From: Ruditapes philippinarum
Taxonomy: Eukaryota
Direction of reading: 5' to 3'
Assembly (NCBI RefSeq): GCF_026571515.1
Contig: NW_026865957.1
Coordinates: 186,001-250,000 of the forward strand
DNA length: 64,000 nt
Part shown: positions 22,113 through 44,150 of the stretch, piece after piece
Layout: each line of letters begins with the position of its first letter
Numbering within the stretch: the first letter of the stretch is position 1
Translations under genes and position numbers: made by a program
The notes under the pieces: model-generated
The model's database searches: none
What the model saw: only the letters and a program-made list of their open reading frames with translations
What the model was told of the DNA's origin: nothing

Positions 22113-23052
22113 TTAGTACTTCGGTCGGTAGGCGGGATCATATCCGGGACCTGTATGCGGAGGAGGATACGTTTGTGGCTGTGGATAACCCGGTTGGAAG
22201 CTGGAACCACCTGGTGGTGGTCCTGGGTAGCTTGGCGGAGGACCTTGCGGATGTGGTTCTAAAATATTAAAGAGAATGTGTGACAGTAAATTTACGACAT
22301 GTTTCTTATAAGATTGTTAAAAATATTACTTACTCATGCGATGTGACATTTTTTAACATTGGGCTATTATTTTAAATCGTTTTGGTCTTAAAATAAATAA
22401 TTGTCTAAGATGGGGATTAAGTAGAATTTTATAGAAACTGTACCAATTAAATAAACAAACTTAATAAAGAAAAACACTTATTACATTAACTTGCTCTAAA
22501 TGACGTCATGATTTAATATTAAAACATGAATTTCACCAAAAAACAAGGCGACAAAGCGGGCTTTAAAGAAACGGTGCAGAATCTGTAACATATTACTTAC
22601 GATACGCAGGAGGTTGAACAACTGTCACTCTTGTCGCGTGTTGTGGAGATGGGTTTATAACACTTCCACGTTGTTTTTTCTTCTTACATATGTAAACCAG
22701 CACGACAATCACAGCCACTATAAATATTGTCCCGAACACGGCGCCGGCCACAATACCGGTTATCGTACAACACCCATAGTCGTAGTCGTACTTGCTGCCG
22801 CAACATCCATACGTGCATTCGTAAGTCTCGCTGTAGTATATGTTATAACAGCTGTCACCTGATGCTCCTACCGGAAGGAAAGACAATAATAGGTTATTAA
22901 TTAGTGAAAACAATCGGATAACTTCCGGCATGTCCGTTTTTTCGTATACTCAGTATGTCTGAGTTGGTCAGATATGCACCAATCCCAATATTAAGTACGA
23001 AACATATTTATATGATTATGTCACATTGTGTCATGTAGTTTTGTTGTGTGTT

Positions 23053-23108
<56 letters not shown>

Positions 23109-23952
23109 TATTATTATTATTATTATTCAATAAGTATCCTAAAAACGCCTCAATTTTAAAGCAGGTGTATGCGTCATTTCTTATGATGTAAAGCCATGGG
23201 ACAATTGTATTCTTACTACATGTAGCAATTACACTTTATTTATAACAGGAATTTGTGCGAGTTTTGTTATTAAATAGCAAGCTAAACCTGAAGATATGTA
23301 CAAATAGTGATGAAGAATAAGGTCATTTTATAATTTATGTATGTTTACAAAACCAACATAATGGGTTTGCGATCAGCATGGATCCAGACCAGCCTGCGCA
23401 TCCGCGCAGTCTGATCAGGATCCATGCTGTTCGCTATCAGTTTCTCTACTTGTAATAGGGTTAGTAAGCGAACAGCATGGATCCTGATCAGACTGCGCGG
23501 AAGCGCAGGCTGGTCTGGATCCTTGCTGGTCGCAAACGCACTATGTGGGTTTTGTCATGACGGGGCTCATATTAATGTTATTCAACGTGCTAAATGAATC
23601 ATAAAGTAATAGATAACCAGCCAATATGTACACTGCACTTTGGTTATATAACTATAACATATGGCCAGTTTTTAATATAGCAAATCGTATACAATTGAGA
23701 TTGTAATTTCAAAGACCACACGATCGGACAATATAAGATAAATCTTTGTTTCCGCTTCAAGGCCCCGTGAAATGATTTTAAAGATGGCAAGTAGCTTCTT
23801 GTTTAAGAAAGTCAACGAAAAAATCGTTATAACATAATTACGTAATTCTTTTTATTGTTTACTGAATGATTAATCAAATAAAATAAGTTATTACCTTGAA
23901 GAAACAGCAATATTGATAAAATAAATGTCGAAGTAAATAATAGAAAATCCAT
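22113..23952 (-). CDS. Shisa-like/CYYR1-like single-pass PY-motif protein, gene A (156 aa); exons 23895-23952, 22601-22867, 22113-22258
   Basis: Signal exon MDFLLFTSTFILSILLFLQ|gt. Exon 2 has CYNIYYSETYECTYGCCGSKYDYDYGCC + TM + CKKKK. Exon 3 is Pro/Gly-rich with PPSY and ends YDPAYRPKY*. GT-AG phase-1 introns keep the frame open. Confidence 0.85.
23053..23126. repeat. Compound microsatellite (ATC)n(ATT)n in intron 1 of gene A
   Basis: Directly visible. Confidence 0.95.
23347..23570. mobile_element. Palindromic MITE (left end truncated)
   Basis: Same family as 26004-26242. Confidence 0.85.
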
Positions 23953-25817
23953 CTTTTGAATGATCGTAAATATTTAACAATTTCTTTTATTCATTTCGTT
24001 TTAAACGGCTTAGACATGTGCCTTAAGCTTATGATTTTACATGTTTAAAAGGTTACATTTTCTAATAAGCTTACGAAATAATAATCGTAATCGGTAATGT
24101 CCGTTCAATTTACAATGTATTTATTTTTATGAGAGACTTATGTTGTGTTTTCATCGGCCTCGCAGACACTACTTTTGATACGACAAATGCCAAAGTCGCA
24201 CGTGCAGACTACGTAATCTAACGAAATTAACCGAGTATCTGTTAATACTTCGGCCAATGTTTTTATAGATCAATAATATCAATACAATAATCAATATATA
24301 CACCAGTCATATATATACAAATGTATATATATATATTTCAGTATCAGCTTAAACAAAGTTAAACATACTAGAAAGTTCAAGTTTAATTTTTGTTTAACGG
24401 AGGAAACAGCCACGTTGATTCAATATTTATTATTATTATTATTATTATTATTTATAATTGTAATTATTATTATTATTTTAAATTAAGCCTAGTCTACTGG
24501 TTATATCAGTTATTACGCATGTTGATACTTTATACTCTGTTAGTTGAATATCCCCAAATTACGAAGATATAATTCCCAGTATTTTCAACGGATTTAATAA
24601 TTCTGAACATACCGCCCTAGAAATATTCTGCTCAACTTTCGAATGAATGATCACAAACATCCTAGTTTCAGTCGATCGATCGGGTACTCCACTGTGGTAT
24701 TTTGACATGACCATGACGGAACTGTAAATTCTTCTGAGATTTTTATACTACTTGATGTGGGTTTGGTCCTATAACTTGTATGCACATTTTCAGATCATTC
24801 CTTTGCCCTGTTTTTTTCCCCAAGCATAATAATTTTAATGCGAAAAAAGACCCTAAAACGAAAAGCGTTGCAAAATCGACCTAACCGTACACAAAAATCG
24901 ATTTTCAATTTAATTGAGTATATATTTTTATTTTCCTTTGCAGGATTGTCCAATTAAGTGGTTGGCATGATCTTTTTAAGAATGTCAATCAAATTTTATG
25001 TTTTTAGGCTGTTTGATCTCAAAAAAGCTCCTTTAATTGTCCAAATAATTCCATTTATATTTGACCGAGATTGAATAATCCCAGTTGTAAAAGATTTCGA
25101 TAATATTTGACCCCTATAAAACGAAACCGGGCCCTTTTAAACATTTAAATATTTTTTCTTGTTTTTTTTCCCTTCAAAACCCCTTTTAATTGTCTAGGCC
25201 ACAAACCGACAATGGGGGGGGCCCCGTGGGGTTAAAGTTAAGGTTGGGTTGGGCTTCAAAACCAAACCCCCACCCCCTTTGCCGAAGTGGGAACAAAAGA
25301 CTTTAAGATTCTCTCATGTTTAAAAAAGTTGTACAGAAAGCTTACGGAAGGTTTGGGGCCCTTTTAAAAGAGACCCTTTTTAGTCCTTAAAAATGCACGA
25401 ACGGAAGGGGACTCTGAGGTCCCAACCACTAAAATTTTGTTTGGGCAGGCACCCCAAAGAACTTTTCATTTTGGGGCCAAAAATTACATAGACCCGTTAC
25501 TATTTTAAAAATTCTAAAATCAAATCTAAAGGGAAAAGGGAAAAAAAAACAAATATAACAATAACGACGTTTTATTTTTCATATAAATAGTGAACATAAT
25601 ATGTTAATTAAATATATCAAAATCTCCTTTATAACTTTACAAATTTTTCGAGTAAACATCTGAAATATTTTTCGCAAACTATGGCCTCAAAATAAAATAA
25701 ATGTATAGTCTTAGGTTGCTATGTTATGTTCTAATAATTAAGTAATAAAGTTCTTATCCAATCATATTAAGGTATGTGACTTGATTCCATCACTGCTATA
25801 TGTAAGAACTTATATAT

Positions 25818-28735
25818 TTATTTAGGTGGGTATGCGGGGTCATAAAGAGGCGCGTTTCCAGGCGGTGGGGGAGGGTACATCTGTGGAGGCTGGTTTCCGG
25901 GGTGAAATCCAGGTGCCCCGGGAGGAGGTCCGTGGTAGCCCGGCGCTGGAGGTCCTTGTGGATCTGAAATGTCAAAATATAAAAAAGTTATTCTGAATAT
26001 TAAATGAGCCGCGTCGCGACAAAACCAACATAATTGGTTTGCGACCAGCATGGATCCAGACCAGCCTGCGCATCCGCGCAGTCTGATCAGGATCCATGCT
26101 GTTCGCTTACCAACTCTATCACAAGTAGAGAAACTGATAGCGAACAGCATGGATCCTGATCAGACTGCGCGGATGCGCAGGCTGGTCTGGATCCATGCTG
26201 GTCGCAAACCCATTATGTTGGTTTTGTCATGACACGGCTCAATTATCAAATAGCACCAATCCTACTGGATAGATGCATTGCTTCCGTGCTTATCATGTGT
26301 GATTGATCAGATACTTGTGCAAGCCCAAAACTACATGTACATTATTGTTGTGTGTACATATTATGTGATATTTTTAGATTCCTTGTATTTGACATTTGAA
26401 GGTTCTATGATAACCGCCGTGTGAACAAATCTGGGGATGTTTCTAAATTCAAAACCTCACCATTTTCATGATTAAATGTTGAAAACTGCTGTAACCGGTG
26501 CTAGGGTGCGCGGACGTTAACTTACTCATTCTGACCAAGCCTGCAACATTTGCAATTTTGTCGTTTTGAGCGAGTTTTTAAAAGGGGTTTCGTGTTTTTC
26601 TTTATTGAATACAATTGGCTTGCCGAAGATGGTCGTAATAGACAGGTATAACAAGAATGTGTACCCTTTTACAGCCGGCCGTAAGAATAAGTTATGAGTA
26701 TATGCCTTGCTTGAGATAATCACAATATACCAGCAGAACAGGTTTGACTTTGTAACATGCCAATGATGGTTGTAATAGGTAAAAAAGTTGTGCCGTGCCA
26801 GGGATGGTCAGAGTTAGATGTAACAACATTTACATGCCGTGTAGATAATAGGGGCTAAAAGCAAGTATAACAAAGCTCGAATTTGTAGATGTGAAACATT
26901 GTCCCAAATCTTTGTCAGCAATGGTTGTCGTTATAGACGGGTAAAACAAAAAGGTTTGTCTCAATAGACTTACAATGTGTGAGTGAATGTAGGGAATGCA
27001 AATGATGGTCGTGACAAAGGTTTTAACATATCTTAAAAGGGTTGACTTAATAGGCATGAATAGCAAATAATGAATGTACCGTGCAAATGATGAGAATACC
27101 AGACATCTGCATAAAAGCTTGTATTTGTGCCGTGCAAAGGAGGTCGGATTTGACAAGGGGTAGCTAAACAGTAAATTGTACAAACCCCGACCTACAGACG
27201 TTTGCACCGAGATATGACAAACTACAATATACTAGTAATCCTTCACAATTTTTATTGTAACCACTTAGATGGGGTAAATGAAATCTGAAATATGGTGGTT
27301 TTGAATATTTTAAGGAACATATACTATATACCGGTATTTCCCGATAAAGCATGGATTATAATAATTATAACACCGGCAAAACTTACTATATGGTGGAGGT
27401 TGAATCACTGTTACAGTAGGAGGAGCATTATTCTGTGGCGGATGATTGACGACTCTTCCTCTCCTCTTTGTCATTTGCTGCTTGCAGACTATGATCACAA
27501 CAACTATAATAACAATGACTATGATTCCCCCGACGACGGCGCCGGCAATTGTGCCTACCTCTACACAACAGCCGTAACTAGAACTGTAATAATCACCACA
27601 GCAACCATTTTTACAGTCGTAAGTTGTCCTATAATACGTGTTGTAGCAGTACTCTGCCGATATACCTATAACATAAAAAACAAAAACATTTTTACTCAAT
27701 GGGAATTAGCAGTGAGGCGGAGACAGCTGGTTCTAATCCTAAAGACTCGTGGGGACATTTCAACTTCATGAAATCCCGATTTCACCATTTCATTTTCAAG
27801 AATTCACGATTTCTATTTCATAAATCCACGATTTCAAATTTACGAATGCGTGATTTCAACTTCGTGAAATTGCAATACCATCATTTCAACATCACGAATT
27901 CACGATTTTAATTTCATGAATTCACGATTTCAACTTCATGAATTCATGATTTCAACTTCACGATCGAACTGATTTCAACTTCATGAATTAATTAACGATT
28001 ACAACTTCACGAATTCGTGAATTTATGAAGCTGAAATCTTGATTCCGTGAATTCCGTATCTTGAAGAGTTTAAACCGCAAATTCACGAAGTTAAAATTGT
28101 GAATTCATGAAAATGAAATCGGGAATTCATAATGTTGAAATGTCCCCACCAGTATTTCGTAAAATCCTGCTATCTACGTGGAGTCATGGTAACAGAACTT
28201 GATGTCTTGTTTGATTTTATACCGATTGTAACACATTTGCATTTATAATTCGGCGGTCGATCATTAACCGGCTTAACTGGATGATTATAATCAGAATTAT
28301 CAGTAATAAATTACTAATTTCATCGAAAATAATTGATTACTTATCTCAAATGTTTCCGAACCAGCGATGAGAGACAAAATACTCATGTATTATCACGGGG
28401 AAATAACGCCCTGCCCGAAGATCGAACCAGTGGAAAGTGACACGCCCCCCTGCCAGGTTACTAAATTACTAATATAACATTTTATCGAGCTAAGTGGGTG
28501 CACATCTTATCTGAATGATTTAAAGTTTTCTTACATAATGTAAAATACCGGTTTGCTAAGCCTAGATTATTACAAGAAATTTCAATAAAAAATGTTCAAG
28601 AGAACTATAATGTGAAATAAAATGATTTTGATCTAAACTATAGTGAATTAAAGAAATAAGTAATATACACTAACCCTTTAGAAACAAAATAAGTAGTAAA
28701 ATAAAAGTTGAGCTGAACATTTCCTGCAAATCCAT
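25818..28735 (-). CDS. Shisa-like/CYYR1-like protein, gene B1 (161 aa); exons 28675-28735, 27387-27665, 25818-25963
   Basis: MDLQEMFSSTFILLLILFLK|G; CYNTYYRTTYDCKNGCCGDYYSSSYGCC; TM; QPPPY; 146-nt Pro-rich last exon, same length as gene A exon 3; canonical phase-1 splice sites. Confidence 0.85.
26004..26242. mobile_element. Palindromic MITE, ~240 bp, in B1 intron 2
   Basis: About 100-bp inverted arms; absent at the equivalent B2 site near 34436. Confidence 0.9.
27741..28162. mobile_element. Foldback-like element built from ~21-bp units (ttcaacttcacgaattcacgat) in B1 intron 1
   Basis: ggggacatttcaac...gttgaaatgtcccc inverted ends; the internal units flip orientation. Confidence 0.75.
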
Positions 28736-29965
28736 GATTGTATATATCATGTCCACATTTTATGTCACAAGAAAATTATTTCAAAATTTTACATTCGATT
28801 TTATTTTGCTTAAAGCTGTTACATTGAAAGGGATTTGAAACTGTAATAGGCTTAGTGTATTGAATTAAATAACTAGATTTTGAAAATGTTGGAGGTTTAA
28901 AGGCATACATCGACGCAACTTAAAAAAGAAACTTTCTTATTGTTAAAACATACTTTTTAAGCTTGGCCTTTGAATTGTTCACTGACCAAAGATAATAAAC
29001 GCATTTTATATTAAATTTTAACCATTACCCATTATAATCATTAATGGACTTGTCCATCTTCCAATTTGGATAAAACCATTTATCATTTAAGGGCAAAATT
29101 CCATTAGGTATTTACCAAATAGCTAACAGTGCAGACCAAGATTCAGGCGGTGTGGGTGTGCTGGTTGATATTGGTCTGCATTGCTCGCATGGATCGAATC
29201 GATTGCCGCCTGTAAGGATTAAAGACAAACATGTTAAAATCTGCCTGCTTGATGAATATTTTTACTTTTTGGTCGAGCAGTGTCTTTAATATTCATGTAC
29301 AGTGAAACCATGAAAGTGGCATAAACAATTGTAAAACTTATTTATATTCACGTATACATTTGTGTAGGGATAAGCAATCAGAAATTCCGTAATACTATAA
29401 TAATAAGGAATAGTATTATATTGCATACAATAAGTGCAGAAAACATATTAGACAAAATTGTCAAATTCCATCCATCTCGTATGTAAAACAATTAATAACA
29501 TTTGTATTAAATTAAAATAAATTATATATTACATCTAATTAATTCTTTCATTTTAATTTAATTTAATTAATTGATTTATTAAATTGAATTAAATTAAGTT
29601 CTGGTTGCCCAGGAGGTATATGTAACACTCGAAAAATATGCACGTTTAGTAAAGGTCCATTATGTCACAGATATGCTTTTATTTTTTCAAAAGCTTCTTC
29701 TTTTTGGTTTCTTGTTATAGTTTCCAAAAAGTAACTAAAGCTAGACCAATAATTTGAACAATCTTTTGTTTCTTTTTCTTTCTGGGAATAAGTACAGTAA
29801 TAGAGATTTAATATTTTGTATGGAAGTCAAAATACTCTATTTTGGTTACATTTTGTTACTTTTGTGACAAAATATTTCACATTCAGTACTACTTCCTTCA
29901 AAAAATAAGCATCTAGCATTATAAACATTATAATATTCATATTTGCTCTTTCTAAATAAGGGAAA

Positions 29966-30204
29966 ATGAGCCGCGTCACGACAAAACCAACATAATGGGT
30001 TAGCGACCAGCATGGATCCAGACCAGCCTGCGCATCCGCGCAGTCTGATCAGGATCCATGCTGTTCGCTATCAGTTTCTCTACTTGTTATAGGGTTTGTA
30101 AGCGAACAACATGGATCCTGATCAGACTGCGCGGATGCGCAGGCTGGTCTGGATCCATGCTGGTCGCAAACGCACTATGTTGGTTTTGTCGTGACGCGGC
30201 TCAT
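29966..30204. mobile_element. Palindromic MITE
   Basis: Full-length; an equivalent copy sits at the same site in the other duplicate (38246-38483). Confidence 0.9.
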
Positions 30205-30850
30205 TAATGTATTCAATTCTGATGCATAATGTGGCTTTAAAATGTAGTTGATTATAATAATTTTCCTTAGCTGAATCTTTACAGTTTCAAGTATTACCAT
30301 GACACCCGCGCCTTAACCAGTTGACTTTTCAGTAGTCAGCCTTCTTAACAATAGAGTTTTAAAATCAAAAGATCCTGACACCGGGAAGACAAGAACAATA
30401 TAAAACACTGAGATAATGTACGGATTTTTTTTTACAAATTCCAAACTGTATGCTCTGCTTCATTTGAGGTATAATGTTTAATGTTACATCCATGTTACAC
30501 AACTACCACAAGAGATAAAAGGTCTAAAGTGCTGATATTAACACATAATACATATACATGTGTCATTTGTTAACGCTGTTGCAACTTCATTGATACAAGG
30601 CCTATATATTACAGTAGATCATTTCTATTTATATTAACTGGACTTCCATGACTATTTTTCTCAAAGTAAAACTTTAAAACCTGTGTCACTGACTAGTTTA
30701 AAATGTCTCATACGTTTGAAACAGTTAACAGCAACTTCTTTCTATCACTATTTTATCTGTTCAGTTGTATTTGCTCTTAAAAGTCGTCTCTTTTCAAAGC
30801 CAACGGCGTTATCAATTCAAACGTTTCAGGTGTTGCTTTTCGTGATTACT

Positions 30851-31846
30851 TTATATACTGTACGGTGGCGGTGGAGAATTATTGCCAATTGTCCGATTAC
30901 ACTCGTTGGTATTCTGATGCGGTTGCCATTCTATTATCTGGCCGGAAGTGTTTCTACCAATAGTATTTGACGCATGCGTGCCATGAACGGAAGCTGAGTC
31001 GATATAATATGGCGGAGGAGCCATTGGTTGTCTGAACACCCCTAAAATAATAAAATAGCTTTTTCAGATTTTCTTATTTCAACAGCGGGGATCGGGGTTG
31101 CTTCTTTTCAAAAGAGGCTACGATGTTAGGCTAAATTTGATATGACTCGACAACATAAAGTAAAGTGTGTCTATAAAAGCGGTTTAATGGGTACAATGTG
31201 CACTTTTAGAGCAATGAAAACACATAATAGAATTCAAGGTAAATGATTTGTTATGAAACTTTTCTGTAAACAGGCAAAATTGCCGTTTCCTACTTCTGCC
31301 TAAAACTGTTAGTCTATATATAGTCACCCTTAAACTTTTAAAATTTTCAATTTATATATTTATTATTCATTTTGAGAAAAGGTTGACACTTGTTCACATG
31401 TTTTAACTCTATGAACTTTCTAAATAAATATCGATAGCCGGCTAATCGTATCAATTTTTCTAGGAAGCGCGACTTTTAGAGAGGGGAAAAAACTATTACA
31501 AAAGTTATAAAATAACATTACTCACATTGTAGATGATAATAGTTAAAGTTCCTTCTGTCAGTTCCATCGATACATGCTCGTGGTAGGTTGGAAGGTCTAT
31601 CTTCAGTCATACGTATCGAAATACCGGACGGTCCGGTTCTTCTCCGTGAATCTGTTTTCTTCTTGTACCAAAGGGCGATAAGCAATACAGCTAGCACTGA
31701 TAGTAAGATTGCAGCCACGATTATATAAGCTATGTAAGATGATGTCGCGCAACAATATTTGTCGGGACTATTTCCACAGCAGCCATTGTCACACATGTAT
31801 AACTCATGCCGAACTTCGTTTATGCACTCCGTTTCGCATTGTACCT
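30851..31846 (-). CDS. Shisa-like protein, gene C1; exons 31526-31846 and 30851-31041 intact, signal-peptide exon not found (5'-truncated duplicate or possible pseudogene)
   Basis: CINEVRHELYMCDNGCCGNSPDKYCC + TM + KKK; tail with MAPPPYY and PPPPYSI*. Homology to C2 stops near 32310, before the position equivalent to C2 exon 1. Confidence 0.7.
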
Positions 31847-33652
31847 CTTGTATGGAAGAAAGAAATAGGTATTTAAAGCGCATATCATTAAAGGCTGGTC
31901 GATATGACTACACGATTTAATATCGTCACTATTTCGACAATTTCTTTTCAGTTTTAGACAAGAATCACTCTAACATTTATATAATAGGTTAATGCGTTTA
32001 CAATTATTAGCAAATGCACGAAGACTTGTTCTATTAGATAACTTCAGATGACACTTAGTTTGAATTTTATTCTGATAAAAAATATATCTTAAGAAGCGTC
32101 ATAAGGAAAGTAGTGCAATATTGTTTCAAAGTAGCTATGTCGTTCTCCAATTAATTTCTTAAAACCGATCAAGATTTCACGTACTAACTGTTGAAATGAA
32201 ATAGTATATAGTGATGGCTATTCATCAGTATAAGTCTAATTAATCCTTACCACTCTAAATATCTTAAATGGACTTGTCCATTCTAAAGACTAAACCATTC
32301 ATCATAAATATAAAGTATATTTTGATATTTCTTCATATATGAAATCTGATCCTTTTTAAGATATGATACTGTTGGTATTTTGCGAGGTTTTCTTAAAAAA
32401 AAATGAATTTTCTTTACAATAAAATCATTAAACCAGAAAACCGAAATGCTTTGAAACACTGAGATAAGTATATCAGTATTCTGTGCTCTATTTTTAAACA
32501 CTTGCGCAGTTTTTTCGGTCCACACAAGTCCAAATATTTTTTAAAACATTTTTTGGTTGTTTTCTTTTGTGAGATCGTGCAGTTCTACTTTGTGTGTCGT
32601 TTTCAAAGAAACCTGCCGGAAAGATAAGTTGGTTCATGTCTGAATACGCCTAAGCATTAGCAAATAGTTCTTTTATGTCCACTTTTACAGAACTACTACG
32701 CTCTTTGTCAGATTACTGTATTGTAACATGGCCAGTGATTGGCTGCGAAAAGGGCAGGAAAAACCGTAAGATTCAATGATAAGCATGTAATGTTAACAAG
32801 TATGAAAAATGTTTATGAAACTAACACTGCATTGTTTTCTTAATAAAATGAACTTTACCATATAGGTCTCTAGGATAATTTCTCATTTGGATTTTTGCAT
32901 TTTAAAAATAGTATATGTCAGTCCTGTGATCAGCAGAAAATTTCATTGAAAAGGGGGAATCATCTTTGGAACACTGCGAAAAATGTGGACTGTCAAACCC
33001 TGTATAACAAGGTCAGTTTAGTATGTCAGGTATGTCATTCTTCTAGAAAAACCCCATCTTTAGCATAAATACTCAATTTTAAGGTTAGTTTAGTGGTAAT
33101 TTCTTGTAATGCCAGTCTATGGGAAAATTAATACAGTAGTATGACTTTGTTCTTAAGTTGTTGAACTAAATTGAAAATGTTTTGCATTCTTACTAGTTAT
33201 TACACTTTATTTATAAAAGACTTAGTGCGAGTTTTGTTATTAAATAGCAAGCTAAATCTGAAGATTTGTACAAATAGTGATGAAGAATAAGGTCATTTTA
33301 GAATTTATGCTAAGTTTACAATAATATTTCACATTTTCTTTCATCTTAAAGCAGTACAAATTGTATAATCAGGCCGATGAAAGACATATTAATTGCAGGA
33401 TTGTCCAATTAAGTGGTTGGCATGATCTTTGTAAGAATGTCAATAAATTGTTATGTTTTTAGGCTGTTTGATCTCAAAAAAGCTCCTTTAATTGTCCAAA
33501 TAATTCCATTTATATTTGACCGAGATTGAATAATCCCAGTTGTAAATGATTTCGATAATATTTGACCCCTATAAAACGACCGGCTTTAATCATAACTATT
33601 TTGCTTGTTATTTCCCTTCAATCATTTTAATTGTCTAGGCTACAAACCGACA

Positions 33653-34241: not shown

Positions 34242-37024
34242 TTATTTAGGTGGGTAGGCGGGGTCATAAAGAGGCGCGTTTCCAGGCGGTGGAGGAGGGT
34301 ACATCTGTGGAGGCTGGTTTCCGGGGTGGAATCCAGGTGCCCCGGGAGGAGGTCCGTGGTAGCCCGGCGCTGGAGGTCCTTGTGGGTCTGAAATGTCAAA
34401 ATATAAAAAAGTTATTCTAAATACAAATGTATTAAATATCAAATAGCACAAATCCTACTGGCTATGTGCATTGCTTCTATGCTTTTCATGTGTGATTGAT
34501 CAGATACTTGTGCAAGCCCAAAATTACATTATTGTTGTGCGTACATATTATGTGATATTTCTAGATCATTATATTTGACATTTGAAGGTTCTATAATAAC
34601 CACTGTGTGAACAAATCTGGGAATGTTTCTAAATCAAAATTTCGCTATTTTCATGATTAAATGTTGAAAACTGCTTTTGCCGATGCTAAGGGACGCGGAC
34701 GTTAACTTCAACTTACCAGTACCGTCCATAAACGGGCTCATTCTAACCGAGCAATTTTGTCGTTTTGAACGTTTTTTTTAAGGATTCTGTTTCTTTCTTT
34801 ATTTAATATAATTGGCTTGCCGAAGATTGTCGTAATAGACAACAACAAGTTTATAACAAGTTTTGAATGTGTACCCTTTTACAAACGGTCGTAAGAATAA
34901 GTTAAGAGTATATGCCTTGCGTGAGATAGTCACAATATACCAGTAGAACAGGTTTGACTTTATAACATGCCAATGATGGTTGTAATAGACCGGTAGAAAA
35001 AGTTGTGCTGTGCCAGGGATGGTTGGAGTTAGGTGTAACAACATTTATATGCCGTGTAGATAAACGGGGCTAAAATAGGTATAACAAAGCTCGAATTTGT
35101 AGATGTGAAACATTGTCCCAAATCTTTGTCACGCAATGGTTGTCGTAATAGACGAATAAAACAAAAAGGTTTGTCTCAATAGACTTACAATGTGTGAGTG
35201 AATGTAGGGAATGCAAATGATGGTCGTTTAACAAAGGTTTTAACTTTTAACATATCTTAAAAGGGTTGATTTAATAAGCGCGATTAGCAAATATTGAATG
35301 TACCGTGCAAATGATGAGAATACCAGACAACTGCATAAAAGCTTGTATTTGTGCCGTGCAAAGGAGGTCGGATTTGACAAGGGGTGGCTAAACAGTAAAT
35401 TGTACAAACCGACCTACAGACGTATGCACCGAGATGACAAACTACAATATACTAGTAATCCTTCACAATTTTTATTGTAACCACTTAGATGTGGTAAATG
35501 ACATCTGAAATATGGTGATTTTGAATAACTTATTTAATTTAAAATATACTTTATACCGGTATCTTCTGATAAAGCATGATTATATTAGACAGGGAAAACT
35601 TACTATAGGGTGGAGCTGAAGGTTGAATCACTGTTACAGTAGGAGGAGCATGATTCTGCGGCGGATGATTGACGACTCTTCCTCTCTTTGTCATTTGCTG
35701 CTTGCAGACTATGATCACAACAACTATAATAACAATGACTATGATTCCCCCGACGACGGCGCCGGCAATGGTGCCTACCTCTACACAACACCCGTAACTA
35801 GAACTGTAATAATCACCACAGCAACCATTATTACAGTCGTAGGCTGTCATATAATACGTGTTGTAGCAGTACTCCGCCGATATACCTATAACAAATAAAA
35901 AGTCAATTTTACTTAATGGGAATTAGCAATGAGGCGGAGACAGACGAAATACTGGTGAGGACATGTCAACTTCATGAAATCCCGATTTCATCATTTCAAC
36001 CTCACGAATTAGTCAATTCATGAAGTTGAAATCGTTAATTCATGAAGTTGAAATCGTGAATTCCTGAAGTTGAAATCGTGAAATCATAAAGTTGAAATCG
36101 TGAATTCATGAAGTTCAAATCGTGAATTAATGAAGATAAAATCGTGAATTTGTGAACTTAAAGTCATGAATTCGTGAAGTTGAAATCATGAGTTCGTGAA
36201 GTTGAAATCGTGAGTTCGTGAAGTTGAAATCGTGAGTTCGTAAAGTTGAAATCGTGAATTCATGAAGTTGAAATCGTAAATTCCTGAAGCTAAAATCGTG
36301 GTATGGTGAAATCCGTATGTTGAAAACGTGAATTCACGAAGGTAAAATTGTGACTTCACGAAAATGAAATCGAAAATTCATGAAGTTGAAATGTCCCCAT
36401 CGGTCTTTCGTATAATCCTGCTCTCTATGCGTTTCTCTTTTCAGATAGCCGTGATAACAATTGACTTGGGCAGTACTTTTTATCGTTTAGCTTGAATTTT
36501 ATACCAATTGTAACACATTTTCATTCATAATTCGGCGGTCGATCAATAAACCGGCTTAACTGGATAACAATAATCAGTAATCAATAACTAATTTCACCGA
36601 AAGTGATTGATTACTAATCTCACATGGGTTCTGAATCAGCTGTGAGAGAAAATAGACTCATGTCCGAGAAGTATTGTCACGGGAAAATTGCGCCTTGCCC
36701 CGACGCTCGAACCACTGACCGCCCCGATTACTAACCCAATGCTTTACCTATTGAGCTAGGTGGACATATCTTATCTCAATAATTTAAAGTTTTTTATTAC
36801 ATAAAGTAAAATACCGATATGCTAAGCCTAGATTATAACAAGAAATTTCATAATAGAATGTCAAGAGAAATACAAATGTTCGCTATCATGTGAAACAAAA
36901 TGATTTTGGTCTAAACTATGTTGAATTAAAGAAATAAATAATATACACTAATAATATACTAACCCTTTAGAAACAAAATAAGTAGTAAAATAAAAGTTGA
37001 GCTGAACATTTCCTGCAAATCCAT
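34242..37024 (-). CDS. Shisa-like/CYYR1-like protein, gene B2 (162 aa); exons 36964-37024, 35604-35885, 34242-34387
   Basis: Near-identical paralog of B1 with the same splice sites. Ectodomain CYNTYYMTAYDCNNGCCGDYYSSSYGCC; QPSAPPY at the end of exon 2. Confidence 0.85.
35944..36412. mobile_element. Foldback-like ~21-bp-unit element in B2 intron 1, inverted relative to the B1 copy
   Basis: Left end acgaaatactggtg, right end ggtctttcgta; same flanks as the B1 copy. Confidence 0.75.
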
Positions 37025-38245
37025 GATTGCATATATTATGTCCACATTTTATGTCACAAGAAAGTTATTTCAAAATACTTCATTCGATTGTATTTTGATT
37101 ATAACTGTAATATTGAAAGGGATTTGGAGCTGTAATAGGCTAAGTGTAACTAAATAACTAGATTTTGAAAATGTTGGAGGTTTAAAGGCACATATCGACG
37201 CAACTTAAAAAAAAACTTTCTTATTGTAAAAACATACTTTTTAAGCTTGGCCTTTGAATTGTTCACTGAACGCACTTTATATTAAATTTTAAGAATTTTA
37301 ACCATTACCCATTATAATTATTAATGGACTTGTCCATCTTTCAATTTGGATAAAACCATTCATCATTTAAGGGCAAATTTCCATAAGGTATTAACTAAAT
37401 AACTAACAGTTCAGACCAAGATCAGGCGATACTGGTGTGCTGGTTGATATTGGTCTGCACTGCTCGCATGGATCAAATCTATTGCGGCCTATAAGGACTA
37501 AAGACAAACATGTTAAAATCTGCCTGCTTGATGAATATTCTTACTTTTTGGTCGAGCAGTGTCTTTAATATTCATGTACAGTGAAACAATGAAAGTGGCA
37601 TAAACAATTGTTAAACTTATTAATATGTACGTATACATCTGTGTAGGGATAAGCAAACAGAAATTTCGTAATACTATAATAATAAGGAATAGTATTATAC
37701 TGCACACAATAAGTGCAGGAAACATAGAAAAAGTTGTCAAATTACATCCATCTTGTATGTAAAACAATTAATAACATTTGTATTAAATTAAAATAAATTA
37801 TATATTAAATCTAATTAATTCTTTCATTTTAATTTAATTTAATTAATTGATTTATTAAATTGAATTAAATTAAGTTCTGGTTGCCCAGGAGGTATAATTA
37901 TGTAACACTCGAAAATTATGCATGTTTAGTAAAGGTCCATTATGTCACAGATATGCTTTTATTTTTTCAAAAGCTTCTTCTTTTTGGTTTCTTGTTATAG
38001 TTTCCAAAAAGTAACTAAAGCTAGGCCAATGATTTGAACCATCTTTTGTTTCTTTTTCTTTCTGGGAATAAGTACAGTAATAGAGATTTAATATTTTGTA
38101 TGGAAGTCAAAATACTCTATTTTGGTTACTTTTTGTTACTTTTGTGACAAAATATTTCACATTCAGTACTACTTCCTTCAAAAAATAAGCATCTAGTATT
38201 ATAAACATTATAATATTCATATTTGCTCTTTCTAAATAAGGGAAA

Positions 38246-38483
38246 ATGAGCCGCGTCACTACAAAACCAACATAATGGGTTAGCGACCAGCATGGATCCA
38301 GACCAGCCTGCGCATCCGCGCAGTCTGATCAGGAACATGCTGTTCGCTTTCAGTTTCTCTACTTGTTATAGGGTTTATAAGCGAACAGCATGGATTCTGA
38401 TCAGACTGCGCAGATGCGCAGGCTGGTCTGGATCCATGCTGGTCGCAAACGCACTATGTTGGTTTTGTCGTGACGCGGCTCAA
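38246..38483. mobile_element. Palindromic MITE
   Basis: Duplicate of 29966-30204. Confidence 0.9.
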
Positions 38484-39128
38484 ATGTATTCAATTCTGAT
38501 GCATAATGTGGCTTTAAAATGTAGTTGATTATAATAATTTTCCTTAGCTGAATCTTTACAGTTTCAAGTATTTCCATGACACCTGCGCCTTAACCAGTTG
38601 ACTTTTCAGTAGTCAGCCTTCTTAACAATAGAGTATCCTGAAACCCGGAAGACAAGAACAATATAAAACACTGAGATAATGTACGGATTTTTTTTTTTAA
38701 AATTCCAAACTGTATGCTCTGCTTCATTTGAGGTATAATGTTTAATGTTCCATCCATGTTACACAACTACCACAAGAGATAAAAGGTCTAAAGTGCTGAT
38801 ATTAACACATAATACATATACATGTGTCATTTGTTAACACTGCTGCAACTTCAAAGATACAATGCCTATATATTACAGTAGATCATTTTTATTTATATTT
38901 ACTGGACTTCCATGACTATTTTTCTCAAAGTAAAACTTTAAAACCTGTGTCACTGACTAGTATAAAATGTCTCATACGTTTGAAACAGTTAACAGCAACT
39001 TCTTTCTATCACTATTTTATCTGTTCAGTTGTATTTGCTCTTCAAATTCATCTCTTTTCAAAGCAAGCAATTTCAGTTCAACGGCGTTATCAATTCAAAC
39101 GTTTCAGGTGTTGCTTTTCGTGATTACT

Positions 39129-41324
39129 TTATATACTGTACGGTGGCGGTGGAGAATTATTGCCAATTGTCCGATTATACTCGTTGGTATTCTGATGCTG
39201 TTGCCATTCGACTATCCGACCGGAAGTGTTTCCACCAATAGTATCTGACGCATGCGTGCCATAAGCGGAAGCTGAGTCGACATAATATGGCGGAGGAGCC
39301 ATTGGTTGTCCGAACACCCCTAAAATAATAAAATTTATTTTTAAGATTTTCATATTTCAACATATATATAATAGCTGCACAGGTGGTTTGCTTCTTTTCA
39401 AAATAGGCTACGATGTTAGGCTAAATTTGATATGAATCAACAAGTGTGTCTATAAGAGCGGTTTAATTGGTATGATGTGCACTTTTAGAGCAATGAAAAC
39501 ACATGATAGAATTCAAGGTAAATGATTTGTTATGAAACTTTTCTGTAAACAGGCAAAAATACCGTTCCCGCACATACTACTGCCTAAAACCGTCAGTCTA
39601 TAGTCATCCTTAAACTTTTACTATTTTCAATTATTATTTATTATTTATTTTGAGAAAAGATTGACACTTGTTCACATAATATGTTTTAACTCTCTGAACT
39701 TTCTAAAAAATATCGATACGCGGCTAGTCGTATCAATTTTTCCAGGAAGCGCGATTTTGAGAGAGGGGAAAAAACTATTACAAAAATTATACAATAACAT
39801 TACTCACATTGTAGATGATAATAGTTAAAGTTCCTTCTGTCAGTTCCATCGATACATGCTCGTGGTAGGTTGGAAGGTCTATCTTCAGTCATACGTATCG
39901 AAATACCGGACGGTCCGGTTCTCCTCCGTGAAACTGTTTTCTTCTTGTACCAAAGAGCAATAAGCAATACAGCTAGCACTGATAGTAAGATTGCGGCCAC
40001 GATAATATAAGCTATGTAAGATGATGTCGCGCAACAATATTTGTCGGGACTATTTCCACAGCATCCATTGTCACACATGTATAACTCATGCCGAACTTCG
40101 TTTATGCACTCTGTTTCGCATTGTACCTCTTGTATGGAAGAAAGAAATATGTATTAAAGCGCATATCATAAAAGCCTCGGCGAAGATAAAATATCGTCAC
40201 TATTTCGACAATTTCACAAGAATTACTCTTACATGTATATAATAGGTTTATGCGAGTACAATTATCTGCAAATGCACGAATACTTATTCTATTAGATAAT
40301 TTCAGATGACACTTAGTTTGAATTTTATTCTGATAAAAAAAATACATCTTAATTAAGAAGCGTCACAAAGAAAGTAGTGCAATATTGTTTCAAAGCAGTT
40401 ATGTCGTTCTCCAATTAATTTCTTAAAAACCGATCAAGATTTCACGTACTAACTGTTGAAATGAAATAGTATATAGTGATGGCTATTCATCAGTATAAGT
40501 CTAATTAATCCTTACCACTCTAAATATCTTAAATGGACTTGTCCATTCTAAAGACTAAACCATTCATCATTTTAAGGGGGGAAATTAACAATATGTACAT
40601 TTGTAAAAACTGCAGTCTACGTTCAAATGGCAAGGACTTTGGTCCGCACGGGCGGCACGAGTAAATTCACTTGCCGCTAGCATATCGATCTTATTACTAA
40701 TAAATTGTTAAGTATTGCATGTCGTTTATCATGTTCTTTTTTTATGTATTGCCGGATACATAAAGAATCTTTAAAAATATTCCCGACCAGACCCACAATT
40801 CCTTGCACGAGATTCATTGGCCCTTCAAGTTGACCAATTTCTGCCATCTTGTTTTAACATAACCGTATCGAGAAAAATTTTGATTTTCTTAATATTCAAT
40901 GGTTTTTATTTTACATTTTTACAACTTCTTTTTGTCACTTCTTTCGATAACCGTAACAAATTTTATATAACGTGGTACATTTTCTCGTTTCAAACATAGT
41001 TTTAGAAATTCTCACGAAAATGAGAACTTGCGAGATGATTTATTCCTGATAAAGTTTTTAGGAGGACGACAGCTTACTCTCCATTTAAATTGCTCTGTGG
41101 TATTTCTGAACCACGCTCTTGTACTTATGTTTACGAAAAGTGCGCTTACTATCAAACGGACTGAAGACAGTAAAGCAATACAATCACCATTGCTGTATCT
41201 TTACAACTGTTCGGAAATAAATATATATTTTAGAATATAATACAAATGCATTTAACATACCTCGCAGTATCAAGAAAAATAGTCCAATTCTGAGGATTGC
41301 TGCGTAGGAATCTAACTTTTTCAT
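39129..41324 (-). CDS. Shisa-like protein, gene C2 (191 aa); exons 41261-41324, 39808-40128, 39129-39319
   Basis: Signal exon MKKLDSYAAILRIGLFFLILR|gtatg, phase 1; six-Cys ectodomain, TM, two PPxY motifs; frame open across both junctions. Confidence 0.82.
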
Positions 41325-42007
41325 TTTCACCTGGGAATTGTGAACGTAAGCGTAACTTTAAAATGTCCACTTTATGTTGGTTAGACCTAAGATCAATAAA
41401 TGCTATGTCAAAATCTCAATACAATGTAATTTAAAGTCTCTTTATTAAATGAATGGTGTTTTCTAAACTAAAGAAGGTAAATAAAAGGTTTTTTATTTTT
41501 ATTTCAACATGTTGTAACGTATTTTATACATAATTTTACATGTGTAAAACTGCAATATTACGCACGCAGTTAAACAATATTATACAATTCAATAGGTTAT
41601 ACATTATTACACAATAACATTTTTGTGGCTGTAATTGGGTTTATTGTAATCCTTTAGATTAAATTATCGAACGATACATGTGTAAACTATGCTTTTATTC
41701 CGTGTGCATGTATACAAAAATTGGTAAAATATAAAAACTAACATATAATTTGTCACACAATTACGTCACCGGTAACTAGATAGTCTCCCCCACCCCCTAC
41801 TGTTCTTTGTTAGAGTAGGTAGCTAGTCACACTTTGGGACTGGTTCATGTAAGTATTACTGAACATTTTTCTTTCTTTTCTTGATAAATAAACGTTTCAT
41901 CTGTCTCACATCCTTCATTTACAACGATATAAATAATCCAGTGCCCCTGACTAGTACTTATATCTTTGTCATCTAACGTTTCCATCCTATTTCTTCTTTA
42001 TCTCATT

Positions 42008-44150
42008 TTAAGCCCGATGAGCAACATCGGCATTAATACTGTATGGTGGAGGCAGTTCGCCGTGCTGTTGTTGTGAAGTTTGGGGATCTAGTGTGTGACT
42101 GTATTCGTTTTGCGTTCGTTTTTGATTGGCAATTTGTTGCATATTTAATGACGTCAGTTCAATGTTTTCGTGAGAAACTTGGACGGCAGTGTAAGGTGGC
42201 GGCGGTCCTATGTACGGAGGAGGAGCCATTGTGCACGAGGAGGGTGTGGCTGAAATGTACAAAAACAATACTTGTACCTTAAGTTTTGAACGACTCATAA
42301 AAATACATTTGAAGACAGTGTAATAATGTATTGTTAAAGGACTATGACTTCTTCGCCGTATATACCATCTGTTTCAACTCAAACAATTCAAGTACAATTC
42401 TCAATTATGTGCGCTCATTTGTTTATTGACTAAATATATTCATAACTCACCACACATGCATTTCATTTTTCTTAACATTGAAAGAAATGGGCAAACATAC
42501 CCTGTTAACAAATATGTAGAATTCATTCTAATACTTTGCGGATGTTTGTAAATACAAAAAACAAACTATGTATATTTGAGTTTACTTACAATGCGATGAA
42601 TAACCGATGATTCTTGTGGTGTTATTTAAGCCTAATACACGATCATGAATTATATCTCGTCTGCTTGTGGAATTGAGCATCCGCTTGAGGTCCTTCCGTT
42701 TCCGGTAGCATATAACGAATACAGCTATTGCTAATACTACTAGGAACATAACACCGGCGACTATATATGGTATAAGTCTTCCATGTAGACAGCATTCAAG
42801 TTCTAAGTCGTTACCACAACATCCGAAATCGCAAAATTTTACCTCGGTGAAATCATGGTTGTAGCAAGCGGCCTCANNNNNNNNNNNNNNNNNNNNNNNN
42901 NNNNNNNNNNNNNNNNNNNNNNNNNNNNNNNNNNNNNNNNNNNNNNNNNNNNNNNNNNNNNNNNNNNNNNNNNNNNNNNNNNNNNNNNNNNNNNNNNNNN
43001 NNNNNNNNNNNNNNNNNNNNNNNNNNNNNNNNNNNNNNNNNNNNNNNNNNNNNNNNNNNNNNNNNNNNNNNNNNNNNNNNNNNNNNNNNNNNNNNNAATG
43101 GCGTCTTATATTTATTGTATATACATGTAGAAACAACAATGATTTTCTAAAGATTTAAATTCTTTTAACATATAATGACCAATGTGTCGGAAAAATGAAA
43201 AAATAAACAAATAAAATAAAAATAAATGCATAAATAAATAAAGAAAAGAAACAGAAATGAGCTAAAATCTTTACAAAAAAGACACAACGACCTATATTAG
43301 TTTTCCAGGTGGGGCTTGATTATATAAATCTTTGTAAGGTGTGCACGGGAGAGCAGCTGGGTAGAACAATTGGCTAGCTGGATAGGTTCCTAACATGTTG
43401 AGACTCGAACCTATCGGAGGTGCTCTGATAATAATTTGGTGCCAATATAACCTGCCACCGGAAACTGATAGCATATGGAATTAAATTTTAAGGCGCGATC
43501 AGTGAATTTGTCTTACTTTTATGTGTTACCATTGGATCCGATCTATATAAAAATCATAGTATCTTTTTAAAGTATGTTTCAGTGTTAACATTGAACCCGA
43601 TATAGATAAAATCAAAGTCTGGGAGTCACATTACATGTACCCATTGCTATTGAACAAGTTGTTTTAATGCAATAAAGTATTTGTAGTTATATGAGAGTTG
43701 CTCGAAAAGTGTAATATTATAAAGGCTTAATTAATTAATCAATAAATTGTTAAGTCTATATTTGTGTGCGAAGTGGGTGGAAAACAGCAATCACGTGTAA
43801 CCAAATATATTTTTGTTGATAAAATCTCTAAAATAAGTATGACCGCTAATTAATATGAAATTTAATAGTCCATATTTAAGACTCCTGTTTGATTTTTGAT
43901 ATATTATAATTACAAATATTTAAATAATACAATATTGTTATAAGAATTCATTTATTGCTCGTACCCTTGACAATATAAACGTTGTTATTTTATTGTGCAC
44001 ATGAATAATATAATATAATAAAAGTAGTATAATGATGTACAACACATAATGTCAGATAATATATCTATTTAATTATATAAAATATTATACAGTCTTACCA
44101 TTAATAAATGTATACAAACATCCAACGTATAGATATAATATCAAAATCAT
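42008..44150 (-). CDS. Shisa-like protein, gene D; exons 44099-44150, 42590-(gap, probably 43104), 42008-42249
   Basis: Signal exon MILILYLYVGCLYTFIN|gtaag; CYNHDFTEVKFCDFGCCGNDLELECC + TM + CYRKRK; last exon with three PPxY motifs (APPPY, PPPPY, LPPPY). The start of exon 2 is interrupted by an N gap. Confidence 0.75.
42877..43096. other. Assembly gap (220 N)
   Basis: Run of N. Confidence 1.

What the first reader, a model, noticed from the sequence alone, without database searches (positions are those of the whole stretch)
22113..44150. Hidden tandem array of six micro-receptor genes: six-Cys ectodomain + TM + PPxY/PSAP tail (Shisa-like/CYYR1-type adaptor cluster)
Seen in the sequence: six co-oriented genes (5'->3' D, C2, B2, C1, B1, A) share a signal exon / Cys-domain+TM exon / Pro-rich exon layout (C1 lacks the first). 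The ectodomain is only ~30 aa. It keeps C-x10-C-x2-GCCG-x8-CC (A, B) or -x6-CC (C, D), while inter-Cys residues differ strongly (YNIYYSETYE, YNTYYRTTYD, INEVRHELYM, YNHDFTEVKF). Established: the C-C-CC-CC pattern + TM + PY motifs defines Shisa-like proteins (CYYR1, WBP1/VOPP1, TMEM92), and PPxY binds WW domains of NEDD4-family E3 ligases. Inference: this is a lineage-expanded set of variable-ectodomain adaptors that route different surface targets to ubiquitination/ESCRT. Clustering with variable ectodomains resembles immune or recognition loci. The ORF track shows only fragments, so automated annotation may miss most of it.
Basis: partly seen in the sequence, partly recalled or inferred. Interest (0 to 1): 0.85.

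Follow-up and report, generated by a model that had tools for sequence, protein, structure and literature searches.

The report
Clam cluster of CYYR1/Shisa-like adaptor genes
Six small membrane-protein genes of the known CYYR1/Shisa-like family, which in vertebrates dock NEDD4-type ubiquitin ligases through PPxY motifs, sit in a row in the Manila clam genome; the array is real and partly recent, but the family is known and half the genes are already annotated.

Summary
Six minus-strand exons carry C-x10-C-x2-GCCG-x6/8-CC, then a transmembrane helix. Each is followed by a phase-1 intron and a Pro-rich exon. These are the only GCCG peptides in any frame of the window.

The genome is Ruditapes philippinarum. 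RefSeq already models three of the six: A ("shisa-5-like"), C2 and D (both "uncharacterized"). I found no protein entry for B1, B2 or C1.

B1+C1 and B2+C2 are a tandem two-gene duplication of about 7.4 kb (87-90% identity, dS about 0.09). B shows purifying selection. The B signal exon is 61/61 nt identical while its flanks are 74-89% identical.

No window protein passes a Pfam cut-off. A profile built from them finds 421 representative proteins; the 16 clusters with a named source were all molluscan, mostly bivalve. Three bivalve hits pass Pfam CYYR1. Profile-profile comparison gives 97.8% to those and 94.9% to Shisa_N-certified exons of the same genome.

So this is a new local cluster of the six-Cys (STMC6/CYYR1) branch of Shisa-like adaptors. 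Binding to NEDD4 ligases is inferred only. The "immune-like variable receptor" idea is unsupported, and "hidden from annotation" is half wrong. The N-termini of C1 and C2 are unresolved. The scan noted a similar tandem family on another piece of this genome.

The parts
23895..23952 (-). Gene A, candidate signal exon (starts MDFL..., phase-1 GT donor)
   Evidence: Similar to the B1/B2 signal exons and to the N-termini of paralogue P0003 and Mercenaria P0008. Not used by RefSeq model P0001, which starts at the in-exon ATG 22931.
22601..22867 (-). Gene A, Cys-domain + TM + juxtamembrane exon (ends with PPAY). The open frame extends up to the ATG at 22931 used by RefSeq.
   Evidence: P0001 'protein shisa-5-like' (158 aa) matches it.
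22113..22258 (-). Gene A, Pro-rich exon with PPSY, through the stop codon
   Evidence: The junction is identical to P0001.
28675..28735 (-). Gene B1, signal exon (starts MDLQ...)
   Evidence: 61/61 nt identical to the B2 copy while flanks are 74-89% identical.
27387..27665 (-). Gene B1, Cys-domain + TM exon, ends with PPPY
   Evidence: There is no in-exon ATG, so an upstream exon is required.
25818..25963 (-). Gene B1, Pro-rich exon through the stop codon (no canonical PPxY)
   Evidence: A ~240-bp palindromic element sits about 40 bp upstream of its acceptor, in B1 only.
31526..31846 (-). Gene C1, Cys-domain + TM exon (seven Cys). No signal exon found.
   Evidence: The duplicated unit ends at 32305, about 460 bp upstream.
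30851..31041 (-). Gene C1, tail exon with two PPPY motifs, through the stop codon
   Evidence: Ten nonsynonymous against one or two synonymous differences from C2.
36964..37024 (-). Gene B2, signal exon
35604..35885 (-). Gene B2, Cys-domain + TM exon. It ends with PSAPPY: PSAP gained, canonical PPxY lost.
34242..34387 (-). Gene B2, Pro-rich exon through the stop codon
   Evidence: The protein is identical to B1 exon 3.
39808..40128 (-). Gene C2, Cys-domain + TM exon
   Evidence: RefSeq P0004 (LOC132730853, 153 aa) starts at a Met between Cys2 and the first CC.
39129..39319 (-). Gene C2, tail exon with two PPPY motifs, through the stop codon
   Evidence: The junction is identical to P0004.
44099..44150 (-). 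Gene D, signal exon
   Evidence: It forms the N-terminus of RefSeq P0007 (XP_060572913.1, LOC132730856).
42590..42876 (-). Gene D, Cys-domain + TM exon. Its 5' end and acceptor lie inside the gap.
42008..42249 (-). Gene D, tail exon with three PPxY motifs, through the stop codon
   Evidence: The junction is identical to P0007.
42877..43096 (.). Assembly gap or masked run inside D's intron 1 and the 5' edge of its exon 2
   Evidence: Not filled.
24938..32305 (-). Duplication unit 1 (B1 + C1)
   Evidence: Self-BLAST, 87-90% identity to unit 2.
33393..40570 (-). Duplication unit 2 (B2 + C2)

Best explanation
The region is a tandem cluster of six co-oriented genes in Ruditapes philippinarum. They belong to the six-cysteine (STMC6/CYYR1-like) branch of the Shisa-like transmembrane adaptors. 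Each encodes a protein of about 150-200 aa: a signal peptide, an ectodomain of about 30 aa with the C*C*CC*CC pattern, one TM helix, a basic juxtamembrane stretch (with a membrane-edge Cys in A, B and D), and a Pro-rich tail with PPxY motifs. The signal peptide is on its own exon in D, probably also in A, B1 and B2, and is unresolved in C1 and C2.

The array grew by local duplication. An older A/B lineage has x8 spacing and a C/D lineage has x6 spacing. D predates the split from Mercenaria. A two-gene unit of about 7.4 kb (B+C) was copied recently.

Inferred mechanism, by analogy with CYYR1, WBP1L and Shisa: the tails recruit WW domains of NEDD4-family HECT ligases at endomembranes or the cell surface. 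This would regulate the ligase itself or direct ubiquitination and lysosomal sorting of membrane proteins that associate through the ecto/TM part. Identity and gene structure are shown here. Ligase binding and cargo are inference.
For: Motif, exon structure and splice phases. RefSeq proteins with the same junctions: P0001, P0004, P0007.

Family: the profile of the window's exons plus paralogues finds 421 representatives at E<=1e-3 and 72 at E<=1e-10 among 1.84 billion. Named members came from 16 mollusc species, mostly bivalves, and are often called CYYR1-like or shisa-4/5-like. Of 88 relatives, 18 hit Pfam CYYR1, 14 WBP-1 and 8 Shisa_N at E<=0.01. P0099, P0118 and P0079 pass the CYYR1 cut-off with 50.6, 40.4 and 34.2 bits. 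hhalign of the window exons against these gives 97.8%, E 8e-13 over 70 columns; with the ectodomain alone it gives 88.8%. hhalign of the ectodomain against Shisa_N-certified exons of the same genome gives 94.9%, E 4e-8.

Selection: B1/B2 dN/dS is 0.13. Exons are 96-97% identical against 74-93% for introns. The signal exon is 61/61 identical.

The six genes sit in one 17-row clade (SH-aLRT 89), with C+D+Mercenaria P0064 at 82.

Function of relatives: CYYR1 binds WWP1/WWP2/ITCH through its PPxY motifs and drives WWP1 to lysosomes; WBP1L adapts NEDD4-family ligases to CXCR4 (PMC11399591). The C*C*CC*CC pattern plus PY motifs defines Shisa-like/STMC6 proteins (PMC5578492). The genome encodes a NEDD4-like gene with four WW exons.
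Against: No window protein reaches a Pfam gathering score. The best scores are Shisa_N at 15.0 bits (cut-off 22) for C1 and WBP-1 at 13 bits for C2; A has no CYYR1 hit. Pfam CYYR1 finds nothing in a six-frame search of the genome. B2 has no canonical PPxY and B1 has only one. C1 has no findable signal exon, and RefSeq starts C2 inside the Cys domain, so one or both C copies may be defective. I obtained no transcript reads and no binding evidence.
Confidence: 0.75

Rival explanations
1. One reading: the array is a diversified repertoire of recognition receptors. Variable ectodomains each capture a different surface target, comparable to immune or recognition loci.
For: Inter-Cys residues differ strongly between A, B, C and D. 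Three of the four B1/B2 replacements, and two of the four differences between A and a second copy of A found on a JGI contig (P0002, probably an allele), fall in the first loop. The family is large and clustered in this genome. Shisa-domain genes are over-represented among gill-specific genes in a mussel (PMC5549309).
Against: Loop variability is family-wide and compositionally simple, rich in Y, S, D and G, which looks like low constraint. C1 and C2 ectodomains are identical and their changes pile up in the tail instead. The B counts are not significant (about p 0.12). D keeps a 52%-identical orthologue in Mercenaria. No expression or challenge data.
Confidence: 0.12
2. Fewer than six genes work. 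C1, and possibly C2, are 5'-truncated or decaying copies without a signal peptide. The functional set would then be A, B1, B2, D and perhaps C2.
For: The duplication unit ends about 460 bp upstream of C1's exon 2, and no paired signal exon exists for C1/C2. RefSeq C2 starts at an internal Met and so lacks Cys1 and Cys2. The C tail shows 10 nonsynonymous against 1-2 synonymous changes. C sits on a very long branch. C1 is absent from the protein collection.
Against: C exon 2 is 97.5% identical against about 91% for the neighbouring intron, with 1 nonsynonymous to 7 synonymous changes. All frames are open, splice sites are intact and both PPPY motifs are kept in both copies. A short N-terminal ectodomain could in principle be translocated by the TM helix acting as a signal anchor (my inference).
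Confidence: 0.45
3. The B1C1/B2C2 repeat is an assembly artefact: two divergent haplotypes laid in tandem. The true array would then have four genes.
For: Bivalve genomes are highly heterozygous and such false duplications are known (general knowledge). An assembly gap lies nearby at 42877-43096.
Against: Divergence is 10-13% with many indels and a copy-specific element insertion at 26006-26241. The two units are joined by about 1.1 kb of unique sequence with no gap between them. RefSeq's C2 model matches unit 2 specifically.
Confidence: 0.1

Closest known systems
[quoted passage not shown]
   Same: Signal peptide, six-Cys C*C*CC*CC Tyr-rich ectodomain, single TM helix with Cys at its cytosolic edge, basic juxtamembrane stretch, tail of about 50-80 aa with PPxY motifs, total size about 150-200 aa. 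Profile-profile probability is 97.8% to Pfam-certified bivalve CYYR1 proteins. NCBI names the paralogue P0003 and many relatives 'CYYR1-like'.
   Different: The window proteins score below the Pfam cut-off. The window's clade is separate from the certified CYYR1 rows in the tree. There are many clustered copies instead of one gene. The number of PPxY motifs ranges from 0 (B2) to 3 (D). C lacks the membrane-edge Cys.
Shisa family proper (Shisa1-9; Pfam Shisa_N PF13908)
   Same: The core C-x2-GCCG-x6-CC of the ectodomain aligns with Shisa_N (C1 and C2 E 0.03-0.05; hhalign 94.9% to certified exons of this genome). Same TM + Pro-rich/PY tail architecture and adaptor role (PMC10531659).
   Different: Vertebrate Shisa proteins have eight Cys (C*C*CC*C*CC*C) and longer ecto and cytoplasmic parts. 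The window genes have six (seven in C). None passes the Shisa_N cut-off, whereas 11 other exons in this genome do.
WBP1 / WBP1L (OPAL1) / VOPP1 / TMEM92
   Same: Members of the same STMC6 group with a TM helix and multiple PPxY motifs. WBP1L adapts NEDD4-family ligases to CXCR4 (PMC11399591, PMC6991692). Weak WBP-1 hits in C2 (E 0.17) and in 14 of 88 relatives.
   Different: No significant direct match from any window protein. Tails are not alignable beyond the motifs.

Membership tests
Shisa-like superfamily, six-Cys STMC6 group (Pei & Grishin 2012, as summarised in PMC5578492 and PMC11399591) | Six cysteines in a C*C*CC*CC pattern right after a signal sequence | tested here: met
   All six genes carry the pattern. 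It lies right after the predicted signal peptide in A, B1, B2 and D. The signal sequence is unresolved for C1 and C2.
Shisa-like superfamily, six-Cys STMC6 group | Single transmembrane helix directly after the Cys domain | tested here: met
   A hydrophobic stretch of about 23-25 aa, 3-6 residues after the last CC, followed by K/R-rich residues. Pfam TM-segment models hit it.
Shisa-like superfamily, six-Cys STMC6 group | Pro-rich cytoplasmic tail with PY ([LP]PxY) motifs | tested here: met
   Canonical motifs: A 2, B1 1, C1 and C2 2 each, D 3. B2 has none and carries PSAP instead.
Shisa-like superfamily, six-Cys STMC6 group | Detectable sequence homology to accepted members | tested here: met
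   hhalign 97.8% / E 8e-13 to Pfam-certified CYYR1 proteins. hhalign 94.9% / E 4e-8 to Shisa_N-certified exons.
Pfam CYYR1 (PF10873) | Score at or above the gathering cut-off of 31 bits | tested here: not met
   A (P0001), C2 (P0004) and D (P0007) have no CYYR1 hit at E<=0.1-10. The paralogue P0003 scores 17.1 bits. The six-frame genome search found nothing.
Pfam Shisa_N (PF13908) | Score at or above the gathering cut-off of 22 bits | tested here: not met
   C1 15.0 bits, C2 14.2 bits; A, B and D have no hit. No exon of the window's contig is among the 14 genome matches.
Pfam WBP-1 (PF11669) | Score at or above the gathering cut-off of 28.1 bits | tested here: not met
   C2 13 bits, E 0.17.
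NEDD4-family adaptors (functional class) | Tail binds WW domains of a NEDD4-family HECT ligase | tested here: inconclusive
   One complex prediction (clam NEDD4-like WW domain + D tail) gave no verdict. Motif presence is the only evidence.

The most novel reading that the evidence does not exclude
Bivalves have turned the single-copy CYYR1/STMC6 adaptor into a large, clustered and fast-turning-over repertoire. In it the first ectodomain loop sets cargo specificity and the tail motifs set the sorting route. The recent B1 to B2 change from PPxY to PSAP would be a live example of rewiring from NEDD4 ligases to ESCRT-I (TSG101).
Probability: 0.1. Interest if true: 0.6.

Novelty: new member of a known kind. 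Interest (0 to 1): 0.3.

Why it matters
The cluster documents a recent gene birth in a little-studied family. STMC6/CYYR1 proteins gained a first mechanism only in 2024, when CYYR1 was shown to regulate WWP1 (PMC11399591). The report supplies corrected gene models for a commercially important clam: three unannotated copies (B1, B2, C1), a probable upstream signal exon for A, and unresolved N-termini for C1 and C2. The B1/B2 pair differs in the one canonical PPxY motif, which makes a natural test of what that motif does. Otherwise it is an ordinary lineage-specific expansion of a known adaptor family.

Tried and rejected

Copy-number comparison across species was therefore not done.

3. Complex prediction of a WW domain from the clam NEDD4-like gene (L026:1483-1596) with the first 40 residues of D's tail returned 'no answer' (score 0.16, mark 0.34). 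This is evidence neither for nor against binding.

4. Direct Pfam assignment of the window proteins gave only sub-threshold hits.

5. A Pfam CYYR1 six-frame search of the genome found nothing. The model spans several exons, so this says little.

6. The search for homologous proteins with the B1 open frame found no protein.

7. The ESM Atlas look-up gave only leads: mollusc clusters auto-named CYYR1, shisa-4-like or WBP1-like. Its own model of A is poor (pLDDT 0.61, pTM 0.30), so I ran no structure prediction or fold search.

8. The family tree has 82 columns for 144 rows and most forks are unresolved. I use only the 17-row clade and the C+D+P0064 grouping, and both are weak.

9. Joined (spliced) protein models were not built or searched. 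Exons were searched apart by reference, and the RefSeq proteins returned by the searches served as the joined forms.

10. One script came back unrun because it held a typed peptide. I repeated it by reference.

11. The genome search automatically fetched locus L003 over gene D. My script printed a frame that runs through the place where the window has N. I set those letters aside, did not analyse them and do not report them.
Full report
**What is there.** Translating the window in six frames, the tetrapeptide GCCG occurs six times, always on the minus strand. Each occurrence lies inside C-x10-C-x2-GCCG-x8-CC (A at 22767-22850, B1 at 27565-27648, B2 at 35785-35868) or C-x10-C-x2-GCCG-x6-CC (C1 at 31749-31826, C2 at 40031-40108, D at 42789-42866). 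In every case the frame runs on into a hydrophobic helix of about 24 residues and a K/R-rich stretch, and it ends at a GTAAGT or GTGAGT donor in phase 1. In A, B1, B2, C1 and C2 a pyrimidine-rich phase-1 acceptor lies 4-6 codons before the first Cys. Downstream, each gene has one phase-1 acceptor that opens a Pro-rich frame running to a stop. Gene order along the minus strand is D, C2, B2, C1, B1, A. The finding's coordinates are exact: 22113 is the end of A's stop codon and 44150 is D's ATG.

**The gap.** The N run 42877-43096 ends nine bases before D's first Cys codon. It therefore hides the acceptor and about three codons of D's Cys exon, and the rest of it lies in intron 1. The signal exon (44099-44150) lies about 1 kb beyond it. 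A homology search returned the RefSeq protein XP_060572913.1 (P0007, 196 aa). This protein starts with that signal exon and continues through the Cys exon and the tail exon with the junction I predicted. So the two sides of the gap belong to one transcription unit in NCBI's model. A locus fetched automatically by the genome search (L003) carries letters at that place, and one script line printed a frame through them. I set them aside.

**Organism and annotation status.** Database names identify the genome as Ruditapes philippinarum.
- Gene A is RefSeq 'protein shisa-5-like' (P0001, 158 aa). Its exon 2-exon 3 junction is mine, but it starts at an ATG inside the exon-2 open frame (22931).
- Gene C2 is 'uncharacterized protein LOC132730853' (P0004, 153 aa). 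It starts at a Met between Cys2 and the first CC, so it lacks a signal peptide and two cysteines.
- Gene D is LOC132730856.
- C1 has no separate entry, and the B1 open frame found no protein at all.

So three of the six genes are annotated, not 'mostly missed'.

**First exons.**
- A scan for ATG...GT phase-1 mini-exons with a hydrophobic core finds one for A at 23952-23895, and D's at 44150-44099.
- It also finds a pair for B1 (28735-28675) and B2 (37024-36964).
- The B pair is 61/61 nt identical, while the 150 nt upstream are 89% identical and the intron sides are 74-85% identical. At about 11% background divergence this would happen by chance with a probability near 1e-3 (my calculation).
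- The A and B exons resemble each other. They also resemble the N-termini of the paralogue P0003 and its Mercenaria orthologue P0008, both of which begin MDF/MDL.
- B has no in-exon ATG, so it needs this exon.
- For A, both starts give a signal-peptide-like N-terminus. Paralogy favours the upstream exon, RefSeq uses the internal ATG, and only reads can decide.
- For C1 and C2 no shared candidate exists. The duplicated segment ends about 460 bp upstream of C1's exon 2.

**The duplication.** Self-BLAST shows unit 1 (24938-32305, B1+C1) and unit 2 (33393-40570, B2+C2) at 87-90% identity with many indels. A palindromic element of about 240 bp is present at 26001-26245 in unit 1 only.
- Exon-by-exon Nei-Gojobori counts for B give dS 0.097, dN 0.013 and dN/dS 0.13.
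- For C they give dS 0.083, dN 0.029 and dN/dS 0.35.
- B exons are 96-97% identical against 74-93% for introns, so both B copies are under constraint.
- In C the Cys/TM exon is constrained (1 nonsynonymous to 7 synonymous). The tail exon has 10 nonsynonymous to 1-2 synonymous changes, with both PPPY motifs untouched.
- B1 ends exon 2 with PPPY and B2 ends it with PSAPPY.

**Family.** Alone, the window proteins stay under all Pfam cut-offs. Shisa_N gives 15.0 and 14.2 bits for C1 and C2 (cut-off 22), WBP-1 gives 13 bits for C2, and the remaining hits are generic TM-segment models.

A profile of the six exons plus paralogues finds 19 exon matches in this genome. Six are in the window. Others form clusters on contig C1575 (three within 12 kb) and contig C11532 (four within 50 kb).

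The same profile finds 421 representatives at E<=1e-3 and 72 at E<=1e-10 among 1.84 billion proteins. Named members come from these molluscs:
- Bivalves: Mercenaria, Mactra, Mya, Dreissena, Mizuhopecten, Argopecten, Potamilus, Sinanodonta, Pinctada, Saccostrea.
- Gastropods: Littorina, Haliotis.

They are called 'CYYR1-like', 'shisa-4-like', 'shisa-5-like' or 'uncharacterized'.

Of 88 relatives, 18 hit Pfam CYYR1, 14 hit WBP-1 and 8 hit Shisa_N at E<=0.01. P0099, P0118 (Sinanodonta) and P0079 (Pinctada) pass the CYYR1 cut-off.

| Profile-profile comparison | Probability | E-value |
|---|---|---|
| Window exon 2 vs those three CYYR1-certified proteins (70 columns: all six Cys, TM helix, juxtamembrane stretch) | 97.8% | 8e-13 |
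| Ectodomain alone vs the same three | 88.8% | 2.5e-6 |
| Ectodomain vs exons of this genome that pass the Shisa_N cut-off | 94.9% | 4e-8 |

The window proteins have six Cys (seven in C). This is the C*C*CC*CC type called STMC6, which includes CYYR1, WBP1, WBP1L, VOPP1 and TMEM92 (PMC5578492, PMC11399591). It is not the eight-Cys pattern of vertebrate Shisa (PMC10531659).

**Relations inside the family.** D has a 52%-identical counterpart in Mercenaria mercenaria (P0064, LOC123530319), and its tail is 46% identical. So D is older than the split of these two venerid clams. In a poorly resolved tree, the six window genes fall in one 17-row clade (SH-aLRT 89) with proteins from Mya, Mactra and Dreissena. 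C groups with D and P0064 (82) on a very long branch. This fits local duplication: an A/B line and a C/D line, followed by the recent B+C copy.

**Function.** Nothing here tests function. In the literature, CYYR1 sits on late endosomes, binds the WW domains of WWP1, WWP2 and ITCH through its PPxY motifs, and sends WWP1 to lysosomes. WBP1L adapts the same ligases to CXCR4 (PMC11399591). Shisa proteins hold back Frizzled and FGF receptors (PMC5578492). The clam genome has a NEDD4-like gene with four WW exons on contig C11258. My single complex prediction, one of its WW domains with D's tail, gave no verdict. The mechanism I commit to is recruitment of NEDD4-family ligases by the tails, with the ecto/TM part choosing the partners. 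I put it at roughly even odds. The family assignment is about 0.9.

**The 'variable recognition receptor' idea.** Loop variability is a property of the whole family, and the loops are compositionally simple. C1 and C2 ectodomains are identical. B1 and B2 show 3 nonsynonymous to 2 synonymous changes in the ectodomain against 1 to 7 elsewhere, about p 0.12 by my exact test. Two of the four differences between A and a second copy of A on a JGI contig (P0002, probably an allele) also lie in loop 1. This is suggestive of a soft spot and no more.

**Surroundings.**
- A 166-aa single-exon ORF at 16363-16863 (-) hits PF06541. From my own knowledge, that is the domain of TMEM229 proteins.
- A weak LSM-domain exon match lies at about 49881-49949 (-) (21.8 bits, below the cut-off).

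**Not done.** Joined spliced models were neither built nor searched.

**Verdict.** The object is a partly recent tandem cluster of CYYR1/STMC6-type Shisa-like adaptor genes, a new member cluster of a known kind and half of it already annotated. Interest is modest.

Noticed in passing
window 23347-23585, 26001-26245, 29964-30216, 38243-38483: A palindromic element of about 240 bp (each copy matches its own reverse complement at 86-90%) occurs four times inside the array. It gives the recurring 'MLFAISFSTC...' ORFs on both strands. The copy at 26001-26245 is absent from duplication unit 2 and sits about 40 bp upstream of B1's exon-3 acceptor. It looks like a MITE.
   Followed up: partly
G000 contigs C1575:126458-138526 and C11532:1982-52094 (loci L008-L012, L015, L019): Further clusters of the same family lie elsewhere in this genome, three and four Cys/TM exons respectively. 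One member (L019) has extra CC repeats inserted after the GCCG core. RefSeq models P0005 and P0006 belong to these groups.
   Followed up: partly
window 35604-35630 vs 27387-27410: A 6-nt indel makes B2 end its exon 2 with PSAPPY where B1 has PPPY. B2 then has no canonical PPxY anywhere, because B's exon 3 has none.
   Followed up: yes
window 23040-23135: A long (GAT)n/(AAT)n microsatellite lies in A's putative first intron. It gives poly-D, poly-H and poly-S ORFs.
   Followed up: no
window 16363-16863 (-): Intact single-exon ORF of 166 aa with Pfam PF06541 (E 2e-7), TMEM229-like, about 5 kb downstream of gene A.
   Followed up: partly
window 59692-59997 (-): A 101-aa ORF with a reverse-transcriptase (RVT_1) match, E 9e-8. 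It is a retroelement fragment.
   Followed up: no
window about 49881-49949 (-): Weak exon-sized match to the LSM domain (21.8 bits, cut-off 23.4).
   Followed up: no
G000 contig C11258:278383-288278 (loci L026, L027): Four WW-domain exons within 10 kb, the first two with the typical NEDD4 'PPGWEE...' start. This is a NEDD4-like ligase gene that could partner the PPxY tails.
   Followed up: partly
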